Position numbers and translations under genes: made by a program
Notes under the pieces: generated by a model
Database searches by the model: none
The model's input: only the letters and a program-made list of their open reading frames with translations
Told to the model about the DNA's origin: nothing
Shown here: positions 7,500-49,759 of the stretch, in pieces
Layout of the letters: each line of letters starts with the position of its first letter
Numbering within the stretch: position 1 is the stretch's first letter
DNA from: Octopus sinensis
Taxonomy: Eukaryota
Assembly: GCF_006345805.1 (NCBI RefSeq)
Contig: NC_043014.1
Coordinates: 15,500,001 to 15,564,000, forward strand
Length of the DNA: 64,000 nucleotides
Reading direction: 5' to 3'

Positions 7500-7947
7500 T
7501 GGCTTGCAGGATGGCCTGCTGTGCTAACCTTGGATCGTAGAGTGACCCGGTGTTCTTGAGGAGACCTACATCAACACCAACATCAAAATAAAAATAAAAG
7601 TTAATGGAAATTGTAGTTAAGATACCCATGCCGGTGACACGTAAAAAGCACTGTCCGAACATAGCTGATGCCAGCGCCGCCTGACTGGCATTCGTGTCAG
7701 TGACACGTAAAAAGCACCAACCGATCGTGGTCGTTTGCCAGCCTCCTCTGGCCCCTGTGCCGGTGTCACGTAAAAAGCACCCACTACACTCATGGAGTGG
7801 TTGGCGTTAGGAAGGGCATCCAGCAGTAGAAACATTGCCAGATCAGACAGGAGCCTGGCACAGCCTCCTGGCATCCCAGACCCCAGTTGAACCGTCCAAC
7901 CCATGCTAGCATGGAAAACAGACGTTAAACGATGATGATGATGATGA
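7500..7947 (+). mobile_element. RTE LINE 3' UTR/tail fragment
   Basis: Ends catgctagcatggaaaacagacgttaaacgatgatgatg, as do the RTE copies ending ~21069 and ~34427. Confidence 0.8.
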
Positions 7948-14715: not shown

Positions 14716-14871
14716 TTAAACTTAAATGTTGAAGTGAATTGAACGGCTTTTGTGTGTTTCTTAAATGGCTTACAAACACCTTCCACGCGGCAATTGTTTT
14801 CGTTCCAGCACACGATCTCAGATCAAATCACTTGCTATGCGAGTACATCTCCGTAATATATATATATATAT

Positions 14872-15059
14872 AATGATAAATATCAAAGTGAGTTATATAC
14901 AGTAGCGGTAACACATCGTGACGTATATTTGCCATTTCAATATGGCTACCCCTAAGGGTGGATGCTACTGTACTGACAGGACACAGAAAGTGTGTCTATG
15001 GCCAGCTGGAGGAGTGTGTCCTCCTGGGGCTAAAAACTACAGTAGCATCCACCCTTAGG
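14872..15059. repeat. Fragment of repeat family B plus an inverted fragment, fused to array A
   Basis: 14872-14972 matches the 21.1-22.2 kb unit; 14971-15059 is the reverse complement of an overlapping part of it. Confidence 0.9.
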
Positions 15060-15309
15060 TCGTGTATCAATAGCTATCTTGATGGCGGTGGCCTCATGGA
15101 GCTGACCATGGCAGCGATTATTCTTATATCTATAAGAATGCCATATTAATATGGCGATAACAATTAATTTCCAGTAAATGCTGCCATAATCTCTTTTATA
15201 GAGACTTAGTAATTTTAATATTTCTATTATTGAAAACAAGTGGATGTATTCCACTGAAACTAGGTAAATATAAGCCTTCGAACAGAGACGTCAGTGGCGA
15301 CACCTGCGG

Positions 15310-15369
15310 GTCTGACTGCGCTACATTGACAAGGGGCAATACCCCGAAACGCGTCTGTAGCTGTCGGAC
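15310..15369 (+). ncRNA. Type I hammerhead ribozyme, U3-A8 variant
   Basis: GTCTGAC tgc GCTACA TTGACAA GGGG caata CCCC GAAA CGCG TC TGTAGC t GTCGGAC; predicted cut after GUC at 15355. Confidence 0.85.
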
Positions 15370-15925
15370 TGGCAGTGTGAAGCGGCTGACCTCCCTTGTT
15401 CGAAGGTTATAATGGATACAGATCGTGTATCAATAGCTATCTTGATGGCGGTGGCCTCATGGAGCTGAGCATGGCAGCAATTATTCTTATATCTATAAGA
15501 ATGCCATATTAATATGGCGATAACAATTAATTTCCAGTAAATGCTGCCATAATCTCTTTTATAGAGACTTAGTAATTTTAATATTTCTATTATTGAAAAC
15601 AAGTGGATGTATTCCACTGAAACTAGGTAAATATAAGCCTTCGAACAGGGACCTCCCTTGTTCGAAGGTTATAATGGATACAGATCGTGTATCAATAGCT
15701 ATCTTGATGGCGGTGGCCTCATGGAGCTGAGCATGGCAGCATTATTCTTATATCTATAAGAATGCCATATTAATATGGCGATAACAATTAATTTCCAGTA
15801 AATGCTGCCATATCTCTTTTATAGAGACTTAGTAATTTTAATATTCTATTATTGAACAAGTGGATGTATTCCACTGAAACTAGGTAAATATAAGCCTTCG
15901 AACAGAGACGTCAGGGCGAACTGCG

Positions 15926-15983
15926 GGCTGACTGCGCTACATTGACAAGGGGCCATACCCCGAAACGCGTCTAGCTGTCGGAC
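15926..15983 (+). ncRNA. Second array-A hammerhead copy, 2-nt deletion in stem I
   Basis: GCTACA TTGACAA GGGG ccata CCCC GAAA CGCG TC TAGC. Confidence 0.6.
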
Positions 15984-16245
15984 TGGCAGTGTGAGTACAT
16001 TGACACCACCACCCTCTGTCTGACCCCCGAAACCGCCATGTACGTGTGACTGAATACTGATCCCTTGTTCGAAGGTATCATGGCTAGCTTAGCTATCTTG
16101 ATGGCGTGGCCTCATGGAGCTGACCATGGCAGCGATTATTTTATATCTTAAGAATGCCATATTAATATGGCGATAACAATTATTTCCAGTAAACGCTGCC
16201 ATAATCTCTTTTATAGAGACTTAGTAATTTTAATATTTCTATTAT

Positions 16246-16289
<44 letters not shown>

Positions 16290-16399
16290 TATATATATAT
16301 AAATATTATATATATATATATATATATATGTTACTTGAAGATAGATATGTTACTTATAGATATGTTACTTGAAGCCTTTGACGAAGTGGAAGGGGGTAT

Positions 16400-18560
16400 A
16401 GCTACACATGGGGTAGAAGACACTGGACGTTTCTGAGGGACAACCTGCTGAAAGCCGCTGACCAGATCTGTGGCTGGTGCAAAGTCCCCTTAAGACCCAA
16501 AATAACATGGTGGTGGAACAATATTGTTGATAGGGCTATTAGACAAAAGAAACAGGCTTGGAAGGCCTGGAAGAACGGTGGTAGCGGGAAGTGTATCAGA
16601 CTGCCAGAAGGGAAGCTAGGAGACAGGTCTATAGCCAGAGGGGAAGCAGATAAAAGAAAATTTGCCAATGTCCTGCGCCGTGAGGATGAAAGACTTGAGG
16701 TATTTCGTGTTGCAAGACAGTGTGTGAGAGAGAATCGAGATGTGGTAGGAGAGAAATGTGTTCGCATGGAGGATGGTTCACTTGCGTTAAATGAGGATGC
16801 AAAGAGAGAAGCTTGGAGACGCCACTATGAAAGGTTGCTGAATGAGGAAAATGAATGGGATAAAGAGAGTCTGCCGAATGTTGACCCAACAGAAGGACCA
16901 GCTATCCGAGTTGATAGTTCCGTGGTAGCTAAGGCAATTAGAAGCATGAAGACAGGGAAAGCCCCAGGCCCATCAGGAATTACTGCAGAGATGCTCAAAA
17001 TATCTGGTAGTGTCGGCTATAGCATAGTCACCCGTATAGTTAACCAGGTGATACACGAAGGAGTCATACCCAATGACTGGTGTAGCAGCATAATAGTCAA
17101 CTGCTACAAAGGTAAAGGCGATGCCCTAGATACAATAACTACAGGGGCATCAAGCTGGGATCAGGTAATGAAGGTTACGGAGAGGGTTATAGCCCAGTTA
17201 ATTAGAGAGAGAGTTAGCTTAGATGATATGCAGTTTGGGTTCGTGCCAGGGAAAAGTACTATACTGATGCTATATTCCTGGTAAGACAGCTGCAGGAGAA
17301 ATACCTAGCCAAAGGTAAGCCCTTGTACCTGGCTTTTGTTGACTTAGAGAAAGCCTTTGACAGGGTCCCCCGATCCCTTATCTGGTGGTCAATGAGGAAA
17401 CTAGGGATAGATGAATGGTTAGTGAGAGCTGTGCGAGCCATGTACAGAGACGCAGCTAGTAAGGTGAGGGTTGGCAACGAGTACAGTGAAGAATTCCGGG
17501 TAGAGGTTGGGGTCCACCAAGGTTCAGTCCTCAGCCCCCTCCTATTTATCATAGTCCTCCAGGCAATAACGGAAGAATTTAAGACAGGATGCCCCTGGGA
17601 GCTCCTATATGCTGATGACCTTGCTCTAATTGCTGAGTCACTATCAGAACTGGAGGAGAAGTTTCAGGTGTGGAAACAAGGATTAGAATCGAAGGGCCTT
17701 AGAATCAACCTAGCCAAAACCAAAGTCCTAATAAGTAGGAAGGTGGACCAACCACAAACGACTTCAGGTAGATGGCCCTGCTCGATCTGTAAAAAGGTGT
17801 AGGTAGAAACTCTATAAGGTGCACCAAGTGTAAGCTATGGACACATAAGAGGTGCAGCAATGTCAAAGGAAGGCTAACTAAGAAAATAGTTTTTGTCTGT
17901 GGCAGATGCTCAGGAGAAATAAACAATGGAAATGTGCAGAGTCCAACTTCTACCACGTTCCAGGGAGACAAACTAGAAGTAGTTGATAGCTTCCGCTACC
18001 TAGGAGACCAAGTCAGTAGCGGGGGTGGGTGTGCTGAAAGTGTAACTGCTAGAGTAAGAATAGCCTGGGCAAAGTTTAGAGAGCTCTTACCCCTGCTGGT
18101 GACAAAAGGTCTCTCGCTAAGAGTAAAAGGCAGACTATATGATGCGTGTGTACGTACAGCCATGCTACATGGTAGTGAAACATGGGCCGTGACAGCTGAG
18201 GATATGCGTAAGCTTGCAAGAAATGAAGCCAGTATGCTCCGATGGATGTGTAATGTCAGTGTTCATAATCGTCAGAGTGTAAGTACTTTGAGAGAAAAGT
18301 TGAACCTAAGAAGTGTCAGTTGTGGTGTGCAAGAGAGACGGCTGCGCTGGTATGGTCATGTGACGAGAATGGCTGAAGATAGTTGTGTGCAAAAGTGCTA
18401 CAACCTAGCAGTTGAGGGAACCTGTGGAAGAGGTAGACCCAGGAAAACCTGGGACGAGGTGGTGAAGCACGACCTTCGAACTTTAGGTCTCACTAAGGAA
18501 ATGACTGAAGACCGAGTCCTATGGAAGTGTGCTGTGCATGAGAGGACCCGGCAGGACTAG
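16400..18560 (+). pseudogene. RTE reverse transcriptase ORF, few frameshifts
   Basis: GKAPGPSG, QFGFVPGKST, AFVDLEKAFDRVPR, GVHQGSVLSPLLF, LLYADDL, FRYLG, MLHGSETW, LRWYGHV, RGRPRKTW. Confidence 0.93.
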
Positions 18561-20890
18561 TCAGGCCATATCCCATGGCCCCTACCTGGGACGTAGTCGA
18601 TCCACCTGTGCATACCTTCCTCTTGTGACACTTGTGAAGACCTGCTGAGGCAAGTGAAAATCAATCAAAATAGATGAACATCAATGGAATTTGTATCTTT
18701 GTGGTACCAGTGCCTGTGGCACACAAGAAAACCATCCGAACGTGGCCGTAGCAGTACCGCATCGACTGGCCTCCGTGCTGTGGGAACATGGTGGCACCAA
18801 AAAACACCATCCGAAGACCCGGCAAGACTAGTCAGGTCATAACCCGTGGGCCCTACCTGGGACGTAGTCAGTCCACCTGTACATACCTTCCGACTTGTGA
18901 AGACCTGCTGAGGCAAGTGAAAATCAAATCAAATCAAAACAAATCAAAATAGATGAACATCAATGGAATTTGTATCCTTGCCGGTGGCACACAAGAATCC
19001 ATCCGAACGTGGCCGTAGTCAGTACCGCTTGTGGTACCAGTGCCGGTGGCACACAAGAATCCATCCGAACGTGGCCGTAGTCAGTACCGCATCACTGGCC
19101 ATCGTGCTGTGGGCACATAACAAACACCATCCGGTCGTGGCCGTTCGCCAACCTCATCTAGCACCTGTGTCGGTGGCACATAAAAACACCTTCCGAAGAC
19201 CCGGCAAGACTAGTCAGGCCATAAACCATGGCCCCTACCTGGGACGTAGTCAGTTCACCTGTGCATACCTTCCTCCTTGTGATACTTGTCAAGGCCTGTT
19301 GAGGCAAGTGAAAATCAAAGGCCTGTTGAGGCAAGTGAAAATCAAAGGCCTGTTGAGGCAAGTGAAAATCAAAATCAAATCAAATCAAATCAAAACAATC
19401 AAAATAGATGAACATCACTGGAATTTGTATCTTGTGGTACCAGTGCCGGTGGCACACAAGAGAAAACCATCCGAAAGTGGCCGTAGCCAGTACCGCATCG
19501 ACTGGCCTCCGTTCTGTGGGCACATGACAAACACCATCCGATCGTGGCCGTTCGCCAGCCTCATCTAGCACCTGTGTCGGTGGCACATAAAAACACCATC
19601 CGAAGACCCGGCAAGACTAGTCAGGCCATAACCCATGGCCCCTACCTGGGACGTAGTCAGTCCACCTGTGCATACCTTCCTTCTTGTGACACTTGTGAAG
19701 ACCTGTTGAGGCAAGTGAAAATCAAATCAAAACAAATCAAAATAGATGAACATCAATGGAATCTGTATCTTTGTGGCACACACTTTGTGGTACCAGTGCC
19801 GGTGGCACACATGAGAACCATCCAGTGCCGGTGGCACACACTTTGTGGTACCAGTGCCGGTGGCACACATGAGAACCATCCGAACGTGGCCGTAGCCAGT
19901 TCCGCATCGACCGGCCTCCGTGCTGTGGGCACGTAACAAACACCATCCGATCATGGCCGTTCGCCAGCCTCATCTGGCACCTGTGTCGGTGGCACATAAA
20001 AACACCTTCCGAAGACCCGGCAAGACTAGTCAGTCCACCTGTGCATACCTTCCTTCCTTCTTGTGACACTTGTGAAGACCGGTTGAGGCAAGTGAAAATC
20101 AAATCAAACAAATCAAAATAGACAAATAGATGAACATCAATGGAATTTGTATCTTGTGGTACCAGTGCCTGTGGCACACAAGAATCCATCAGTGCCGTAG
20201 TCAGTGCGGTGGGCACATGACAAACACCATCCGATCGTGGCCGTTCGCCAGCCTCATCTAGCACCTGTGTCGGTGGCACATAAAAACACCATCCGAAGAC
20301 CCGGCAAGAACTAGTCAGGCCATAACCCATGGCCCCTACCTGGGACGTAGTCAGTCCACCTGTGCATACCTTCCTTCTTGTGACACTTGTGAAGACCTGT
20401 TGAGGCAAGTGAAAATCAAATCAAAATCAAATCAAAACAAATCAAAATAGATGAACATCAATGGAATTTGTATCTTTGTGGTACCAGTGGCCGGTGGCAC
20501 GTGCATATAAGAAAACCATCCGAACGTGGGCGTAGCCAGTACCCATCGACTGGCCTCCGTGCTGTGGGCACGTAACAAGCACCATCCGATCGTGGCCGTT
20601 TGCCAGCCTCATCTGGCACCTGTGTCGGTGGCACATAAAAACACCATCCGAGCGTGGCCGTCTGCCAGCCTCGTCTGGCACCTGTGTCGGTGGCACATAA
20701 AAAAACCATCCGAGCGTGGCCGTCTGCCAGCCTCGTCTGGCACCTGTGTCGGTGGCACATAAAAACACCATCCGAGAGCGTGGCCGTCTGCCAGCCTCGT
20801 CTGGCACCTGTGTCGGTGGCACATAAAAAACACCATCCGAGCGTGGCCGTTTGTCAGCCTCGTCTGGCACCTGTGTCGGTGGCACATAAA
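18545..20890 (+). repeat. Six ~270-410-bp tandem units plus ~5 x 60-bp subrepeats in the RTE 3' UTR
   Basis: gacccggca(a/g)ga at ~18545, 18816, 19198, 19605, 20014, 20298; 27-bp x3 at ~19290-19375; 60-bp units 20620-20890. Confidence 0.9.
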
Positions 20891-21065
20891 ATCACCCACT
20901 ACACTACACTCTCGGAGTGGTTGGCGTTAGGAAGGGCATCCAGCTGTAGAAACACTGCCAGATCTGACTGGACTGGTGCAGCTTTCGGGCTCCCCAGACC
21001 CCAGTTAAACCGTCCACCCATGCTAGCATGGAAAGCGGACTTAAATGAGATGATGATGATGATGA

Positions 21066-21105
<40 letters not shown>

Positions 21106-21269
21106 TATATATCGTGACGTATATTTGCCATCTCAATATGGCTACCCCTAAGGTGGATGCTACTGTAGTTTTTAGCCCCAGGAGGACACACTCCTTCAGC
21201 TGGCCATAGACACACTTTCTGTGTCCTGTCAGTATTTGCAAAGGGAAGTCATCCTTCCCGTCTCCAACT

Positions 21270-21330
21270 TATGATACACACGGACTCGAGTTTCGAGGTA
21301 TTGACCTCTCGTCAGCGTGTGACAATCATA
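21270..21330 (-). ncRNA. Type I hammerhead ribozyme, canonical core
   Basis: TATGAT tgt CACACG CTGACGA GAGGT caat ACCTC GAAA CTCGAG TC CGTGTG t ATCATA; predicted cut between 21283 and 21282. Confidence 0.92.
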
Positions 21331-21619
21331 GTTTGCGGCGAGAATTAGATTTCCTTCACAAATACTTATACTTTTTCCAGCGTCCACTGTCGCTGATATT
21401 GAAAAAGTGAAATCAAACAATGATAAATATCAAAGTGAGTTATATACAGTAGCGGTAACACATCGTGACGTATATTTGCCATCTCAATATGGCTACCCCT
21501 ATGGGTGGATGCTACTGTAGTTTTTAGCCCCAGGAGGAACACTCCTCCAGCTGGCCATAGACACACTTTCTGTGTCCTGTCAGTATTTGCAAAGGGAAGT
21601 CATCCTTCCGTCTCCAACT

Positions 21620-21680
21620 TATGATACACACGGACTCGAGTTTCGAGGTATTGACCTCTCGTCAGCGTGTGACAATCATA
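21620..21680 (-). ncRNA. Type I hammerhead ribozyme, copy 2
   Basis: Same sequence as copy 1 over the motif. Confidence 0.92.
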
Positions 21681-21969
21681 GTTGTCGGCGAGATTAGATT
21701 TCCTTCACAATACTTATACTTTTTCCAGCGTCCACTGTCGCTGATATTGAAAAAGTGAAATCAAACAATGATAAATATCAAAGTGAGTTATATACAGTAG
21801 CGGTAACACATCGTGACGTATATTTGCCATCTCAATATGGCTACCCCTAAGGGTGGATGCTACTGTAGTTTTTAGCCCCAGGAGGACACACTCCTCCAGC
21901 TGGCCATAGACACACTTTCTGTGTCCTGTCAGTATTTGCAAAGGGAAGTCATCCTTCCCGTCTCCAACT

Positions 21970-22029
21970 TATGATACACACGGACTCGAGTTTCGAGGTA
22001 TTGACCTCTCGTCAGCGTGTGACATCATA
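21970..22029 (-). ncRNA. Type I hammerhead ribozyme, copy 3
   Basis: Identical core; 1-nt deletion in the distal stem I region. Confidence 0.9.
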
Positions 22030-22247
22030 GTTGTCGGCGAGAATTAGATTTCCTTCCCAAATACTTATACTTTTTCCAGCATCCACTGTCGCTGATATTG
22101 AAAAAGTGAAATCAAACAATGATAAATATCAAAGTGAGTTATATACAGTAGCGGTAACACATCGTGACGTATATTTGCCATCTCATATGGCTACCCCTAA
22201 GGGTGGATGCTACTGTAGTTTTTAGCCCCAGGAGGACACACTCCTCC

Positions 22248-22291
<44 letters not shown>

Positions 22292-22350
22292 ATAAATAAT
22301 ATATATATATAAATATAATATATATATATATATATTAAAATATATATATT

Positions 22351-22406
<56 letters not shown>

Positions 22407-22430
22407 TATATATATATATAATATATATAT
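22248..22430. repeat. (AT)n microsatellite
   Basis: Direct reading. Confidence 0.95.
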
Positions 22431-22825
22431 ATCATCATCATCATCATCAACATCGTCATCTTCTTCTTCTTCTTCTCCACCTTCTACCTCTTAACTTTAT
22501 CACTAATGCTTTTTAATATAACACCTACGCAAATTCCATAAACAAACCTTTCAATAGAAATATTCTCCTGAATTGAACTGCAACTGCTAGCCGTCACTGA
22601 CCATTCAAAATACGACCATCAAGGCACTCCCAAATTTTTCCACCCCCTCTCCTCATCAACCTTCTTCTTCTTCTACTCTACCAAGAATTCACAATGGCCT
22701 GGAACACACAAGTGCAAACAAGGGAGACATAGAAAGGCAGAATGCCACTTATATTTGAACACTATACAAATATTCCTTTAAAAAAACTTTTCTTTTAATT
22801 TTTTCTAAATTTAATTATTTAATCG

Positions 22826-23739: not shown

Positions 23740-24345
23740 ATATAAAGAACACATTTTTGTCCTGCAGAAGGACCACAAAAATTGGCACTCATGGCAAAGA
23801 CCCTCAACAAAATGATTCTTAATAGGATCCAGCCTGAGATGAGAAGAAGCTCAGGGGCAACAAGAACAGCTTCAGAGAGGAAAGATCAACCACCAATCAC
23901 ATTCTAATGCTGAGGAGGATATTAGAGGGAGCTAGAGTCTTCCTGCTGTCATGGTTTTCATTGACTTTAGGAAGGCCTTTGGTTCTGTGGATCATCACTG
24001 CCTGATGAATATCTTACAGGTTTATAGAATCCATAAGAAGATAGACTTGATATCACTGCTCTACACCAACACCAAAGCACAAGTCATTACACCTGACAGG
24101 ATGACGGAGTTCTTTGAGATATTGGCTGGAGTGCTTCAGGGAGATACACTGGCTCCTTACTTTTTTATCATCATGGTGGACTATTGTATGTGCCTTGAGT
24201 TGGAGAAACACCAGGACTCTGGCTTTACTGTAATGCTGGCTCAGAGCAGGAGGGTCAAAGGTAAAAAGATATCAGATGCTGATGACATAGTTCTGGTGAC
24301 AAACACAGTGAGGGAGGCAGAGGAGTTGATGCAGGAGGTGGAGAC
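23740..24345 (+). pseudogene. RTE-like RT fragment (second family)
   Basis: KTLNKMILNRIQ, VFIDFRKAFGSVDH, GVLQGDTLAPYFFII, ADDIVLV. Confidence 0.85.
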
Positions 24346-24399
24346 TGTATCAATTTGCCCTGTTTATATATCTACATATATAAAAAAAGGGTAAAAACC

Positions 24400-25162: not shown

Positions 25163-25234
25163 TGCCCAATGTGGGGCTCGAACCCATGACCCGAGATTAA
25201 GAATCTCATGCTCTACCAACTGAGCTAGCAAGGA
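25163..25234 (-). tRNA. tRNA-Lys(CTT) pseudogene
   Basis: TAGCTCAGTTGGTAGAGCATGAGATTCTTAATCTCGGGTCATGGGTTCGAGCCCCACATTGGGCA; acceptor stem has 3 mismatches. Confidence 0.85.
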
Positions 25235-25271
25235 GCTCAATTTTGTTTTATATAAAGATTACAATACAAAG

Positions 25272-32609: not shown

Positions 32610-34427
32610 ACTACAGGGGTATCAGGTGATGAAGGTCACGGAGAGGGTCATAGCTCATCTCATTAAGGACAGAGTCTGCTTAGATGAGATGCAGTTCGGT
32701 TTTGTGCTGAGCAGAAGCACCACTGATGCCATATTCCTGGTTTGACAACTGCAGGAGAAATACCTAGCTAAAGATAAACCCCTATACTTAGCTTTTGTGG
32801 ACTTGGAGAAAGCCTTTGACAGGGTCCCCTGATCCCTTATCTGGTGGGTGATGCGGAAACTGGAGATTGATGAATGGTTAATAAGGGTTGTACAGGCCCT
32901 ATACAGAGAGGTTAGGATTGGTAATGAGTATAGTGAAGAATTTCGGGTAGATGTAGGGGTCCACCAAGGTTCCGCTCTCAGTCCCCTTTTATTCATCATA
33001 GTCCTCCAGGCAATAACAAAGGAATTCAAGATGTGTTGCCCCTGGGAGCTCCTCTATGCTGATGACCTGGTCCTCCAGCAGAATCACTACTGGAACTAGA
33101 AAAGAAATTTCGGGTGTGGAAGCTAGGTTTAGAATCAAAAGGCCTTAGAGTCAATGTAGCAAAGACCAAAGTTCTAGTAAGTAGGAAGGCAAACTCACCA
33201 CACACCGCTTCTGTAGAAAAGGTGTAGGTAGAAACTCCATAAGATGTATCCAGTGTAAGCTATGGACACATAAGAGGTGCAGCAACATCAAAGGAAGATT
33301 AACCAAGAAGATAGCTTTTGTGTGCGGCAGATGCACAAGGGCAATAAACACCACAGATGCTCAGAAATGAACACTCCAGCGGGAGAAACTAGAAGTAGTT
33401 GAGAGCTTCCGCTACCTAGGTGACCAAATTAGTAGTGGGGTGGATGCTCAGAGAGCGTTACCACTAGAATAAGAATAGCCTGGGCAAAGCTTAGAAAGCT
33501 TCTAACCCTACTTGTGACAAAGGGCCTCTCGCTCAGAGTGAAAGGTAGATTGTATGATGCATGTGTGTGAACTGCCATGCTTCACAGCAGTGAAACATGG
33601 GCTGTGACTGCGGAGGACATGCGTAGGCTCAAAAGAAATGAAGCTAGCATGATCAGCTGGATGTGTAATGTCAGTGTCCATGCACGACAGAGTGTAAGTG
33701 CCTTGAGAGAAATGTTGGATATAAGAAGCATCAGATGTGGCGTGCAAGAGTGATGTTTGCGCTGGTATGGTCATGTACTATGGATGGATGTCGAGAGATG
33801 TGTGAAGAAGTGCCACTTCCAAACAGTTGAAGGAATCCGGGGTAGAGGTAGACCCAGGAAGACATGGGATGAGGTGGTCAAACATGACCTTTGAATGTTG
33901 GGCCTCACAGAGGCAATGATGAAAGACCAAGACCCCTGGAGATATGCTGTGACTGCGAAGACCCGGCATATAAAGTGAGTTCATGGCTGTATCCTACACC
34001 AGTTTCGCATAACCAGCCCCAGCCCATTCAAAAGTACCTTGGATCGTAGGGCAACCTGCTGTGCTTATCTTGGATTGTAGGGTGACCTGCTGTGCTCGAG
34101 GAGACTTATTGAGTCAAGTACATCAACATCAAAATAAATATCAAATAGAAATTGTAGTTGTGATACCTGTGCTGGTGGCACGTAAAAAGCACCATCCAAA
34201 CGTGGCTGATGCCAGCGCTGCCCTGACTGGCTTCCTTGTCGGTGGCACGTAAAAAGCACCCTCTACACTCATGGAGTAGTTGGCATTAGGAAGAGCATCC
34301 AGCTATAGAAACACAGCCAGATCAGACTGGAGCCTGGTGCAGCCTCCTGACTTCCCAGACCCCGGTCGAACAGTCCAACCCATGCTAGCATGGAAAACGG
34401 ACGTTAACCGATGATGATGATGGTGAT
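32610..34427 (+). mobile_element. RTE LINE 3' half with UTR and tail, degenerate
   Basis: QFGFVL, DLEKAFDRVP, GVHQGSALSPLLF, LLYADDL, RGRPRKTW; tail catgctagcatggaaaacggacgttaaccgatgatg. Confidence 0.9.
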
Positions 34428-48232: not shown

Positions 48233-49759
48233 TATTGGGTTGTCCGGAAAGTTCATGCTGATTTTTAAGGGAAATTAAAAGACAAAACAAAATTATGCCA
48301 TTAAATATTTACTCGACTAAATATGAACCACTTCATTACACAACCTTTCTCCATCTTTCCTTCAGCTTAAAGATTCTGTCTTCCCAGAATTTCAGTGGTT
48401 TCTTGGCAAAGAACTCATTAAGGTGGGTTTTTTTATGTCCACCAAAAAATTCAAAATTTTACCATTGAGACTATTTTGCAAGGACCTGAATAAATGAAAA
48501 TCCAAAGGAGCAAAGTCTGGTGAATATGGCAGGTGGGATAACACATCCCAGCCAAGCTGCAGCAACTTTTGATGGATCACCAAAACATGAGGTCTAGCAT
48601 TATCCTGATGGAAAACAACACCTCTCCTGTTTGCCAATTCTGGGTGTTTTTCTTGAATTGTTGCCTTTAAATCGTCCAGTTGTGAGCAGTACTTCTCAGA
48701 ATTAATTGACTGGTTATTTGGCAGAAACTCATAGTAGAGGATTCCTTTCCAATCCCACAAGATGCAGTGCATGACTTTCTTAGGCTGAAGACCAGCTTTT
48801 GGGGTGGCTAAAGGTGGCTCATGTCGCTTACCCCAGGATCTTTTTCACTGAACATTATTGTAAACAATCCATTTCTTATCACACATCACAACTTGCTTCA
48901 AAAAGGGTCCATTTCCATTGCATTTATACAGCAAATCAAAGATAGAAATGTGATCCAAAAGATTCTTTTCACTCAGATCATGTGGTACCCAAAAACTGTG
49001 GTGATTCGAGTACCCAAGCTTCACTAAGTGCTCATGAATGGTGGATTTCGATAAATTTAGTGTTTCTGCCAATTCCCACATTGTGTAATGTGGGTTATTC
49101 TATTTCTTTACTACCCACAAGGGGCTAAACACTGAGGGGACAAACAAGGACAGACAAACGGATTAAGTTGATTACATCGGCCTCAGTGCGTAACTGGTAC
49201 TTAATTTATCGACCCTGAAAGGATGAAAGGCAAAGTCGACCTCGGCGGAATTTGAACTCAGAGCGTAACGGCAGACGAAATACGGCTACACATTTCGCCC
49301 AGCATGCTAATGTTTCTGCCAGCTCGCCGTCTTAATGTGGGTTATTCTCAATCAATGTCTTGAAGCAGTGGTGGTGGTGGTGGTGGTGGGGTTTTGCCTG
49401 AGTGTTCTTCATCAATAAGGTTGCAATCACCAATTCTAAACTTAGTGAACCACTTCTGTACAGTTCTGTCAGCTAAAGCACCTTAACTATACACAGCTGG
49501 TTGCTTGCATGGCATTTTTGCCTTTAGGGTAATAAAAAAGGCATCAAGTGTCTAAAACGTACCTTATAATCTTCCATTTCCTTAGGGATGCAAAATTGAC
49601 TCAAATTAAGTAATTTTAAACTTTCTTTCTCAAGAGATAGCTTGAAGTGTGCAATAACCAGAAATGTAAGTATATTATGTGTTGATAAATTTGACATGTT
49701 CTAACGTGTTGGAACATGAACAACTAAAAATCAGCATGAACATTCCGGACAATCCAATA
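48233..49759 (-). mobile_element. Full-length mariner (mellifera-like) with ~35-bp TIRs; transposase pseudogenised
   Basis: TIR tattgggttgtccggaaagttcatgctgattttta mirrored at 49725-49759; WDWKGILYYEFLP, FHQDNARPH, PYSPDFAPLDFHLFRSLQN; ~1.28 kb without the SINE. Confidence 0.93.
49102..49332 (-). mobile_element. SINE family B inserted in mariner, 16-bp TSD
   Basis: taatgtgggttattct at 49086-49101 and 49333-49348. Confidence 0.93.

What the first reader, a model, noticed from the sequence alone, without database searches (positions are those of the whole stretch)
21111..22247. Retrozyme-like tandem array: 350-bp units, each with an intact canonical hammerhead ribozyme
Seen: three full ~350-bp head-to-tail units plus a partial, inside (AT)n, with no ORF. 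On the minus strand each unit has CACACG-CTGACGA-GAGGTcaatACCTC-GAAA-CTCGAG-TC-CGTGTG, a distal stem I (TATGAT/ATCATA) past a tgt/t bulge, and a palindromic stem III (ACTCGAGT). The rest of the unit is hairpin-rich (ggagga/tcctcc, gacaca/tgtgtc, gggaag/cttccc, tacagtagc/gctactgta). Established: metazoan non-LTR retrozymes are tandem repeats of this size class with type I HHRs that release monomers, which can circularise. Inference: this is an octopus retrozyme making ~350-nt linear and circular RNA; I do not recall one characterised in cephalopods but cannot check the literature.
Basis: partly seen in the sequence, partly recalled or inferred. Interest (0 to 1): 0.92.

Follow-up and report, generated by a model that had tools for sequence, protein, structure and literature searches.

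The report
Hammerhead-ribozyme retrozyme tandem repeat
This is a short non-coding tandem repeat in which every unit carries an intact self-cutting hammerhead RNA motif, a known kind of animal mobile element ("retrozyme") expected to release 350-nt RNAs that can close into circles; it is a good new example rather than a new kind of thing.

Summary
Window 21111-22248 is a 351-bp x 3.3 tandem array (97% identity) sitting in (AT)n. Its minus strand carries three identical type I hammerhead ribozymes with a complete catalytic core. Cleavage at GUC| (21983/21982, 21633/21632, 21283/21282) would release monomers of exactly 350 nt. Rfam scores them 32.2 bits, just under its 34-bit cut-off. A structural descriptor finds them, with no hit in 300 shuffled windows. 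The unit has no ORF of note, is 43% GC and folds far better than shuffles (z about -5.5). Every sequence-level criterion of metazoan non-LTR retrozymes (Cervera & de la Pena 2020) is met. Transcription, cleavage and circles are untested, and the "octopus" origin could not be verified. Two refinements: the 2-bp helix III with its palindrome ACUCGAGU makes the double hammerhead the predicted minimum-energy fold of a two-unit transcript, while the monomer favours an inactive fold. A second locus (14855-16329), also in (TA)n, holds 99-100% identical inverted fragments of this unit fused to a different repeat family whose hammerhead has the U3-A8 core covariation. That is a footprint of transposition resembling Penelope-like element insertions. 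Verdict: new member of a known kind; moderate interest.

The parts
21111..22248 (-). Family-A retrozyme array: 3.25 head-to-tail units of 350/351 bp. In RNA-sense register it runs from monomer position 86 through two full monomers to position 173.
   Evidence: TRF period 351, 3.3 copies, 97%; unit identities 97.8-98.8%; phase of the ends
21977..22021 (-). Hammerhead ribozyme 1 (type I). Cleavage after C at 21983. This copy has a 1-nt deletion in the distal helix I just upstream.
   Evidence: Rfam RF00163 32.2 bits, full model; descriptor hit; unit alignment
21627..21671 (-). Hammerhead ribozyme 2. Cleavage after C at 21633. The extended helix I spans about 21615-21684.
21277..21321 (-). Hammerhead ribozyme 3. 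Cleavage after C at 21283 (21283/21282).
21633..21982 (-). Predicted released monomer 1, 350 nt, 5'-CGUGUG...GAGUC-3'
   Evidence: linear MFE -117.7 kcal/mol, z -5.4; circular MFE -112.6, z -5.6
21283..21632 (-). Predicted released monomer 2, 350 nt
21048..21112 (.). Left target microsatellite: (GAT)7 then (AT)n
22248..22460 (.). Right target microsatellite: (AT)n then (ATC)n, the mirror image of the left flank
14872..14972 (-). Second locus: family-A fragment, monomer positions about 116-218, 99% identical. Its 3' end abuts (TA)n at 14855-14871.
14971..15059 (+). Second locus: family-A fragment in the opposite orientation, monomer positions 49-137, 100% identical. It forms a 22-nt inverted overlap with the previous piece.
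15060..16248 (+). Family-B tandem array: units of 363, 262 (hammerhead arm deleted), about 392 and a partial unit. It is joined directly to the A fragments and ends in (AT)n at 16249-16329.
15320..15361 (+). Family-B type I hammerhead with a U3-A8 core pair: GCUACA-UUGACAA-GGGG-caaua-CCCC-GAAA-CGCG-UC-UGUAGC. Helix III is the palindrome ACGCGU.
   Evidence: descriptor hit with 0 in 300 shuffles; pair-by-pair comparison with A; not scored by Rfam
15936..15975 (+). Second family-B hammerhead copy, damaged by a 2-nt deletion in the 3' strand of helix I

Best explanation
The array is a non-autonomous retroelement of the metazoan non-LTR retrozyme class.

Proposed working:
1. The minus strand is transcribed through the array as a multimer. 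This is inferred; the promoter is unknown.
2. Neighbouring hammerheads pair through their palindromic helix III (ACUCGAGU) into a double hammerhead and cut after each GUC. [quoted passage not shown] The fold is predicted here; the chemistry is established for hammerheads.
3. In the monomer, the long helix I arm holds the two ends together while the ribozyme core relaxes into an inactive hairpin. The monomer is therefore a good substrate for an RtcB-type tRNA ligase and is stable once circular. The fold is predicted here; ligation has been shown for mussel and axolotl retrozymes.
4. Circular or multimeric RNA is reverse-transcribed by the enzyme of an autonomous element, most likely a Penelope-like element whose endonuclease nicks (TA)n. 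Priming occurs on internal AU-rich stretches. This yields tandem cDNA copies of arbitrary phase, 5' truncations, inversions and template switches. This step is inferred from the junctions in this window.
For: Anatomy:
- A 351-bp x 3.3 array carries three identical type I hammerheads with every invariant core base, a G10.1-C11.1 pair, an A15.1-U16.1 pair and a GUC triplet.
- The descriptor finds 3 hits against 0 in 300 shuffles.
- Monomers are exactly 350 nt.
- GC is 43%. There is no ORF longer than 84 aa and no protein relative.
- The monomer fold has z -5.4 as a linear RNA and -5.6 as a circle.

Ribozyme constraint:
- The co-resident family-B hammerhead keeps all 19 structural pairs.
- Eight of those pairs differ from family A by compensatory double changes. 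These include the tertiary pair C3-G8 -> U3-A8, a covariation already known from Schistosoma PLE hammerheads (PMC4209133).

Dimer switch:
- For a lone hammerhead, the MFE is a non-catalytic fold (-26.3 against -20.4 kcal/mol for the catalytic fold).
- Two copies cofold into the double hammerhead (-44.9 against 2 x -20.1).
- For the real 451-nt two-ribozyme transcript, the unconstrained MFE (-154.5) is the double hammerhead. Two single hammerheads cost 14.6 kcal/mol more.

Mobility:
- 99-100% identical fragments lie 6 kb away.
- All four outer junctions of the two loci lie in (TA)n, which covers 2.1% of the window.
- The 3' junctions fall at internal AU-rich positions (173 and about 218), not at the cleavage site.
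- The second locus shows an inverted, truncated copy and fusion to another hammerhead repeat.
- The same insertion habits are described for PLEs (PMC8557442).

Class properties come from the literature: PMC7229834 and bioRxiv 10.64898/2026.07.22.740005.
Against: - There are no expression, cleavage or circle data.
- The Rfam score is just under the curated cut-off (32.2 against 34 bits).
- There is no independent relative of the unit: metagenome, viral-contig and protein searches found none. Comparative support therefore rests on one other family in the same window.
- The identity of the three ribozymes says little. About 12 variants lie elsewhere in the array, and only about 1.5 would be expected in 45 nt.
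- No Penelope-like RT or GIY-YIG ORF is in the window.
- Target-site duplications cannot be read inside a microsatellite.
- Tandem structure could also arise by unequal crossing-over.
- MFE predictions ignore tertiary contacts and co-transcriptional kinetics.
- The 2020 paper reports that invertebrate retrozyme hammerheads usually cut well as monomers.
Confidence: 0.77

Rival explanations
1. The unit is simply the terminal repeat (pLTR) of an autonomous Penelope-like element, and this array is a set of solo or truncated terminal repeats rather than a separate non-autonomous family.
For: PLEs carry type I hammerheads in their terminal repeats, insert as partial tandems with inverted 5'-truncated copies, and prefer microsatellites such as (TA)n (PMC4209133; PMC8557442). 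Xenopus retrozymes are sister to PLE terminal repeats. The second locus shows exactly such an inverted, truncated structure.
Against: No RT or GIY-YIG ORF lies between or beside the units, and the only RTs nearby are LINE-type with a PHD finger. Units follow each other head to tail every 350 bp. The ribozyme has the canonical design: a 6-bp helix I with an internal loop, a 4-5-bp helix II and a 2-bp helix III with a tetraloop. PLE terminal repeats typically carry the minimal form instead, with a 7-8-bp helix II, a short helix I and no helix III (PMC7761336).
Confidence: 0.1
2. It is an ordinary satellite that grew in place by unequal crossing-over or replication slippage. The hammerhead is an inherited relic with no present role, and no RNA circles or retrotransposition are involved.
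For: Tandem repeats can expand locally, as the 2026 preprint itself proposes after a PLE-derived seed. Only 3.3 units are present. No expression data exist. Strong hairpin content is seen on both strands (antisense z -4.8).
Against: Near-identical fragments at a second, separate (TA)n site, in both orientations and fused to another family, cannot come from local expansion. All core bases and all helices are intact in all three copies. The related family B preserves the fold through 8 compensatory changes. The helix III palindrome gives a double-hammerhead MFE in the real transcript, which is unlikely for a decaying relic.
Confidence: 0.08
3. It is a Pol III-transcribed SINE-like hammerhead element of the Schistosoma Sm-alpha type, moved by a LINE rather than by a PLE.
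For: LINE reverse transcriptase fragments are close by (16382-18557, 23936-24391). The 2020 paper leaves LINEs open as possible mobilisers.
Against: The unit has no A-box or B-box and no poly(A) or LINE-like 3' tail. A T5 run at sense position 229 would tend to stop Pol III. The (TA)n target, the inverted truncated copy and the tandem partial copies fit PLE insertions.
Confidence: 0.04

Closest known systems
Mytilus galloprovincialis non-LTR retrozymes (Cervera & de la Pena 2020, PMC7229834)
   Same: Mollusc-type tandem repeats of 350-390 bp with one type I hammerhead per unit, non-coding, low GC and a highly self-paired monomer. In the mussel they are shown to give abundant circular RNA, and RtcB circularises them in vitro.
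   Different: No sequence similarity was tested or found. The mussel ribozymes lack most of the loop 1/loop 2 contact nucleotides. This one has the classical 3-nt/1-nt internal loop in helix I and a loop 2 (UCAAUA) close to the Rfam consensus CAAAUA. Nothing has been measured for this element.
Newt satellite 2 / axolotl retrozymes Rtz_331 and Rtz_353 (HHR_Amex1 and HHR_Amex2)
   Same: 330-350-bp tandem units. Helix III is weak and capped by a palindromic tetraloop. HHR_Amex2 has 2 bp plus a tetraloop, as here. These ribozymes cleave far better in dimeric constructs, which matches the double-hammerhead MFE predicted here.
   Different: The hosts are vertebrates, with about 10^5 copies per genome. 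Here only one array and one set of fragments are visible, and the dimer dependence is a prediction.
Penelope-like element terminal-repeat hammerheads, including the Schistosoma Cercyon U3-A8 variant (PMC4209133)
   Same: Type I topology, a palindromic helix III and action as dimers. The U3-A8 core covariation is the one seen in family B. The insertion style is also shared: (TA)n targets, partial tandems and inverted 5'-truncated copies.
   Different: PLE ribozymes are minimal (long helix II, short helix I, little or no helix III) and flank an RT-GIY-YIG ORF. Here the ribozymes have the canonical layout and no ORF is present.
Avocado sunblotch viroid double hammerhead (Forster et al. 1988, as cited in PMC4209133)
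   Same: The same regulatory logic: an unstable helix III means cleavage occurs in multimeric replication or transcription intermediates and is avoided in the monomeric circle.
   Different: An infectious plant RNA with ribozymes of both polarities and no DNA stage. Here the element is genomic DNA with a ribozyme on one strand only.
Plant LTR retrozymes (PMC4918200)
   Same: Non-autonomous, hammerhead-bounded, with circular RNA intermediates.
   Different: They have type III ribozymes inside LTRs, a PBS and PPT, 4-bp target duplications, 600-1000-nt circles and Gypsy-type mobilisation. None of these applies here.

Membership tests
Metazoan non-LTR retrozyme (Cervera & de la Pena 2020) | Head-to-tail tandem repeats with units of about 150-450 bp | tested here: met
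   351 bp x 3.3, 97%
Metazoan non-LTR retrozyme (Cervera & de la Pena 2020) | A type I hammerhead in every repeat unit (the 'active' criterion of Li et al. 2026) | tested here: met
   Three identical hammerheads 350 nt apart on the minus strand. Only the truncated 3' partial unit lacks one.
Metazoan non-LTR retrozyme (Cervera & de la Pena 2020) | No protein-coding capacity; no LTR, PBS or PPT organisation | tested here: met
   The longest frame is 84 aa with no homologue. Units abut directly, with nothing between them.
Metazoan non-LTR retrozyme (Cervera & de la Pena 2020) | Low GC (<45-50%) | tested here: met
   43.4%
Metazoan non-LTR retrozyme (Cervera & de la Pena 2020) | Monomer predicted to be stable and highly self-paired | tested here: met
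   Linear -117.7 kcal/mol, z -5.4. Circular -112.6, z -5.6, 63% paired.
Metazoan non-LTR retrozyme (Cervera & de la Pena 2020) | Dispersed copies in the genome (mobile, not one satellite block) | tested here: inconclusive
   One further locus with 99-100% identical fragments lies 6 kb away. The genome-wide copy number cannot be obtained with these tools.
Metazoan non-LTR retrozyme (Cervera & de la Pena 2020) | Expressed as monomeric linear and circular RNA; the ribozyme self-cleaves | not testable with these tools
   No transcriptome or bench data are available. Only fold predictions could be made.
Metazoan non-LTR retrozyme (Cervera & de la Pena 2020) | Co-occurrence with autonomous Penelope-like elements in the same genome | not testable with these tools
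   None is in the window. Octopus vulgaris is reported to have Penelope families (PMC13282606), but the window's taxon is unverified.
Hammerhead ribozyme type I (Rfam RF00163) | Score at or above the curated gathering threshold | tested here: not met
   32.2 bits against 34. The model is matched end to end, with E 9e-6 locally and 4e-4 for the window. This is a near miss of a score cut-off, not of a structural feature.
Hammerhead ribozyme type I (Rfam RF00163) | Invariant core C3 U4 G5 A6 N7 G8 A9 / G12 A13 A14 / A15.1-U16.1 / H17, with helices I, II and III in type I order | tested here: met
   CUGACGA ... GAAA ... A-U ... GUC, with helix I of 6 bp (plus a distal 10 bp), helix II of 4-5 bp and helix III of 2 bp plus UCGA
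Hammerhead ribozyme type I (Rfam RF00163) | Helices supported by covariation | tested here: met
   Compared with the family-B ribozyme: 19/19 pairs kept, 8 double changes, 1 single and 0 broken. This rests on only two families, so it is modest evidence.
Penelope-like element (terminal repeat) | Repeats flank an ORF with a telomerase-like RT and a GIY-YIG endonuclease | tested here: not met
   There is no such ORF at either locus. The RTs in the window are LINE-type, and no GIY-YIG motif occurs in any of the six frames.
Penelope-like element (terminal repeat) | Minimal hammerhead (helix II 6-8 bp, helix I 2-5 bp, helix III absent or 1 bp) | tested here: not met
   Canonical helix sizes, compared with the description in PMC4209133
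Sm-alpha-like hammerhead SINE | Internal Pol III A and B boxes | tested here: not met
   No match on either strand of the unit

The most novel reading that the evidence does not exclude
The two loci together may be a rare readable footprint of how animal retrozymes move. The model would be target-primed reverse transcription at (TA)n nicks made by a Penelope-like GIY-YIG endonuclease. It would be primed by microhomology on internal AU-rich stretches of a circular or multimeric template, which explains the arbitrary phase of the arrays. It would also involve template switching between two co-expressed retrozyme families and twin-priming-like inversion. If genome-wide junctions repeat this pattern, they would identify the autonomous partner's target preference. 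The 2020 review says retrozyme sequences give no clue to which autonomous element mobilises them. In addition, the helix III palindrome would act as a built-in switch: cut as a multimer, stay intact as a circle. That would answer the open point in the 2020 paper about what keeps the circles from re-cleaving.
Probability: 0.3. Interest if true: 0.6.

Novelty: new member of a known kind. Interest (0 to 1): 0.36.

Why it matters
Retrozymes are a ribozyme-based route to abundant small circular RNAs in animals, and their mobilising partner is still only inferred. This element adds a clean example, possibly from a cephalopod, where none is described in the literature I could search. Automated Rfam annotation would miss it by 2 bits. 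It offers three testable points:
- A predicted multimer-only (double-hammerhead) cleavage switch.
- A natural C3-G8 / U3-A8 covariation between two ribozyme families living side by side.
- Insertion junctions in (TA)n with inversion and inter-family fusion, which point to Penelope-like machinery.

None of this changes the known picture of the class.

Tried and rejected
- **Rfam at gathering thresholds** found only a tRNA. The hammerheads appear only in E-value mode.
- **Fishing for other copies through the array's spurious 84-aa ORF** in the 5.8-billion-protein collection gave no candidate.
- **An exact-core DNA pattern** in metagenome and viral contigs gave 0 hits.
- **A looser pattern shared by families A and B** gave 56 metagenome hits, about the number expected by chance. 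Only one contig (L033) had real hammerheads, and it is unrelated outside the core. Viral contigs gave 0.
- **Fixing the taxon** with the LINE ORF (best 51%) and the mariner fragment (best 74%) left 'octopus' neither confirmed nor refuted.
- **Looking for a Penelope-like element** found none. I ran Pfam on the ten most substantial ORFs and a GIY-YIG regex in six frames.
- **Pol III boxes and a TATA-type promoter:** no A/B boxes were found, and a single TATATAA is not interpretable.
- **Using identity of the three ribozymes as evidence of selection** was rejected, because only about 1.5 of the roughly 12 array variants would be expected in 45 nt.
- **MAFFT alignment of the A and B ribozymes** misplaced the 3' half, so pairs were counted in an explicit structural register instead.
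- **The Pestivirus, miRNA and snoRNA 'hits' in E-value mode** are (AT)n and low-complexity artefacts far below their thresholds.
Full report
**1. The observation**

The region is as described. Tandem Repeats Finder reports one array at 21111-22248 with period 351, 3.3 copies, 97% matches and score 2185. It is bracketed by (AT)n at 21068-21112 and 22248-22432 (sequence). Units are 97.8-98.8% identical.

On the minus strand the string CACACG-CUGACGA-GAGGUCAAUACCUC-GAAA-CUCGAG-UC-CGUGUG occurs three times, at 22021-21977, 21671-21627 and 21321-21277. Rfam's default scan did not list these. Each scores 32.2 bits against Hammerhead_1 (RF00163), whose gathering score is 34. In E-value mode all three match the model end to end, with E 9e-6 locally and 4e-4 for the whole window.

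As an independent check I wrote a type I descriptor requiring the invariant core, helix I of at least 5 bp, helix II of at least 4 bp, the A15.1-U16.1 pair and H17. It finds exactly these three sites, plus one variant described in section 4, and nothing in 300 dinucleotide-preserving shuffles of the window.

Cleavage after the C of GUC falls at 21983/21982, 21633/21632 and 21283/21282, and the sites are exactly 350 nt apart. In ribozyme register the array is therefore partial(266)-350-350-partial(172). That gives three ribozymes and two complete releasable monomers.

The longest stop-to-stop frame in the array is 84 aa, and it has no relative among 5.8 billion proteins.

**2. The ribozyme**

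All invariant positions are present: C3 U4 G5 A6 C7 G8 A9, G12 A13 A14, A15.1-U16.1 and C17.
- **Helix I.** It has 6 bp, then an asymmetric internal loop (UGU opposite U), then about 10 more pairs.
- **Helix II.** It is GAGG/CCUC with loop UCAAUA, close to the Rfam consensus loop CAAAUA.
- **Helix III.** It is only A-U and C-G capped by UCGA, so that ACUCGAGU is an 8-nt palindrome.

This matches the published description of canonical metazoan type I hammerheads: helix I of 6 bp, helix II of 4 bp, and a short helix III with a small palindromic loop (PMC4209133). It also matches the '2 bp plus tetraloop, similar to invertebrate HHRs' form (PMC7229834). From my own memory, not tested here, the 3-nt/1-nt internal loop in helix I is the layout of the Schistosoma ribozyme whose loop contacts were seen in the crystal structure.

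**3. Monomer or dimer?**

Folded alone with 81 nt of context, the ribozyme's minimum-energy structure is not the catalytic one. It is -26.3 kcal/mol, against -20.4 when the hammerhead helices are enforced. Two copies cofold into a double hammerhead with an 8-bp intermolecular helix III, at -44.9 against 2 x -20.1.

More tellingly, I folded the real 451-nt minus-strand transcript 21700->21250, which contains two ribozymes and the 305-nt body between them.
- The unconstrained MFE (-154.5 kcal/mol) is the double hammerhead.
- The two palindromes pair with each other, and both helices II form.
- The 5' strand of helix I of the first copy pairs with the 3' strand of the second.
- The inner helix I closes the folded monomer body.
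- Forcing two separate single hammerheads costs 14.6 kcal/mol.

In the released monomer, linear or circular, helix I still forms, but the core sits in the inactive hairpin.

The predicted behaviour is therefore cutting in multimers and quiescence in the monomer or circle. This is the logic proposed for newt and avocado sunblotch viroid ribozymes and measured for axolotl retrozymes. These are thermodynamic predictions only. The 2020 paper found that invertebrate retrozyme ribozymes often cut well as monomers, so both modes remain possible.

**4. A second locus and a second family**

A search of the window with the unit found two further pieces. One is at 14872-14972 (99% identical, monomer positions about 116-218, element on the minus strand). 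The other is at 14971-15059 (100% identical, positions 49-137, element on the plus strand). Together they form an inverted pair with a 22-nt overlap.

These pieces are preceded by (TA)n (14855-14871) and followed directly by a different tandem family, B, at 15060-16248. Family B has units of 363, 262 and about 392 bp plus a partial unit, and it ends in (AT)n at 16249-16329.

Family B carries, on the plus strand at 15320-15361, GCUACA-UUGACAA-GGGG-caaua-CCCC-GAAA-CGCG-UC-UGUAGC. Rfam does not score it, but my descriptor with a U3/A8 core finds it, with no hit in 300 shuffles. It has the same helix I design as A: 6 bp, an internal loop UGC opposite U, then a distal stem. Its helix III is also palindromic (ACGCGU).

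Position by position, all 19 structural pairs are kept in both families. Ten are identical, one differs on one side, and eight differ by compensatory double changes. Among the eight is the tertiary pair C3-G8 -> U3-A8. That covariation was already described for hammerheads of the Schistosoma PLE Cercyon (PMC4209133), so it is not new. It is nevertheless the best comparative evidence available here that both ribozymes are under structural constraint.

Family B is heterogeneous. Its second unit lacks the whole ribozyme arm through a deletion between short GAC repeats. Its third unit has a 2-nt deletion in helix I and an 85-bp insert.

**5. Evidence for movement, and by what**

- **Target.** Pure (TA)n of at least 12 bp covers 2.1% of the window, yet all four outer junctions of the two loci lie in it.
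- **Phase.** The family-A array starts at monomer position 86 and ends at position 173 (...CACGAU|(AU)n). The locus-2 fragment ends at about 218 (...UUUAUCAUU|(AU)n). Family B ends at ...CUAUUAUU|(AU)n. The 3' junctions are thus internal, different from one another, AU-rich, and not at the ribozyme cleavage site.
- **What the phase implies.** This is what one expects if the template has no fixed 3' end, as with a circle or a multimer, and is primed by microhomology with a nicked (TA)n target.
- **Structure.** Partial tandems, an inverted 5'-truncated copy next to the insertion, and a bias for microsatellites such as (TA)n are the published hallmarks of Penelope-like element insertions (PMC8557442).
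- **Published link.** PLEs are the proposed mobilisers of animal retrozymes (PMC7229834; bioRxiv 10.64898/2026.07.22.740005). The retrozyme papers I read do not mention a microsatellite target.
- **Caveats.** The link is inference. No PLE reverse transcriptase or GIY-YIG endonuclease is in the window. The RT-bearing ORFs (16382-18557 with a PHD finger, 23936-24391, 32833-33096) are LINE-type, and a mariner fragment lies at 48395-49099. Successive nested insertions followed by rearrangement could give the same picture.

**6. Comparison with the known class**

Cervera & de la Pena (2020) define metazoan non-LTR retrozymes by these features:
- Tandem repeats of roughly 150-450 bp with type I hammerheads.
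- No LTR, PBS or PPT.
- Low GC.
- Highly self-paired monomers.
- Likely circularisation by RtcB-type tRNA ligase.
- Co-occurrence with PLEs.

Their mollusc example, Mytilus, has 350-390-bp units.

All of the sequence-level criteria are met here: 351 bp, a ribozyme in every full unit, no coding capacity, 43% GC, and folding z-scores of -5.4 (linear) and -5.6 (circular). Expression, cleavage, circles and PLE co-occurrence cannot be tested with these tools.

The alternatives fit less well.
- **PLE terminal repeat.** There is no flanking ORF, and the ribozyme is canonical rather than minimal.
- **Sm-alpha-type SINE.** There are no Pol III boxes.
- **Inert satellite.** There is a dispersed second copy, intact motifs and compensatory variation.

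**7. Taxon and novelty**

I could not verify 'octopus'. The LINE ORF's best relatives are 51% identical. The few named hits (54-58% identical over 50-59% of the query) come from Hydractinia and Octopus sinensis, plus Mercenaria at 50% over 68%. The mariner fragment's best hit is 74% and unnamed. A marine invertebrate is plausible.

In the held literature no paper combines hammerhead ribozymes or retrozymes with cephalopods beyond a passing mention in the PLE survey. Penelope families are annotated in Octopus vulgaris (PMC13282606). The 2020 study scanned RefSeq invertebrate genomes generally, so such elements may have been seen but not described.

Whatever the host, this is a new member of a known kind. 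Its value lies in the clean anatomy, the predicted double-hammerhead switch, the side-by-side C3-G8/U3-A8 families, and the readable insertion junctions.

**8. Verdict**

- **Observation:** confirmed.
- **Interpretation:** supported at the level that sequence can reach.
- **Confidence:** 0.77 that this is a retrozyme-class element with a functional-looking hammerhead. Confidence is lower, about 0.3, for the specific PLE/(TA)n/template-switch mechanism and the multimer-only switch.
- **Interest:** 0.36.

Noticed in passing
window 14855-16329: A composite insertion between two (TA)n tracts. It holds two inverted fragments of the family-A unit (99-100% identical to the array 6 kb away), fused to a 3.5-unit array of a different 363-bp hammerhead repeat (family B). 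It looks like twin priming or template switching during reverse transcription.
   Followed up: yes
window 15320-15361 (+); damaged copy about 15936-15975: The family-B type I hammerhead has U3-A8 in place of C3-G8 and a palindromic helix III (ACGCGU) whose 2-nt loop cannot close a hairpin, so it would be an obligate dimer. Rfam does not score it. The covariation is known from Schistosoma PLE hammerheads.
   Followed up: yes
window 15423-15684: One family-B unit (262 bp) has lost exactly the hammerhead-bearing hairpin arm (about 101 nt) by a deletion between short GAC repeats at the base of the arm. The rest is 98-100% identical. It is a natural ribozyme-less variant inside the array.
   Followed up: partly
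window 21048-21112 and 22248-22460: The microsatellite that received the family-A array is itself mirror-symmetric: (GAT)7(AT)n ... (AT)n(ATC)n. The empty site would be a long perfect palindrome.
   Followed up: no
window 18542-20896 (also 7704-7763 and 34169-34263): A GC-rich (about 50%) complex satellite lies directly beside the array. It has 407-bp units and a 62-bp sub-repeat (GGCACATAAAAACACCATCCGAGCGTGGCCG...), and contains no hammerhead. Its nature was not determined.
   Followed up: partly
window 16382-18557 (+): A 5'-truncated LINE in three frames (RVT_1, then a PHD finger) lies immediately after the family-B array's (AT)n. Its best relatives are about 51% identical, from assorted marine invertebrates.
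   Followed up: partly
window 25163-25236 (-): tRNA-Lys(CTT) by ARAGORN. Rfam scores it 37.3 bits but with a mispaired acceptor stem, and it sits among (TA)n tracts. It may be a pseudogene or the head of a tRNA-derived SINE.
   Followed up: no
L033 (metagenome contig TBL_comb47_HYPODRAFT_10135176), minus strand 178-219 and 758-799: A freshwater-lake contig of 1112 bp is a 580-bp repeat (1.9 copies) with a type I hammerhead, UCCUAA-CUGACGA-GGGG-caaua-CCCC-GAAA-CUAG-UA-UUAGGA. Helix II and loop 2 are the same as in family B, and helix III is the palindrome ACUAGU. Rfam (E<0.1) and TRF (period limit 500) both miss it. It is probably a retrozyme of an unidentified eukaryote.
   Followed up: partly
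window 48395-49099 (-): A mariner transposase fragment (Transposase_1, E 5e-23) in two broken frames. The window as a whole is repeat-dense, with 40 (TA)n tracts and no recognisable host gene.
   Followed up: no
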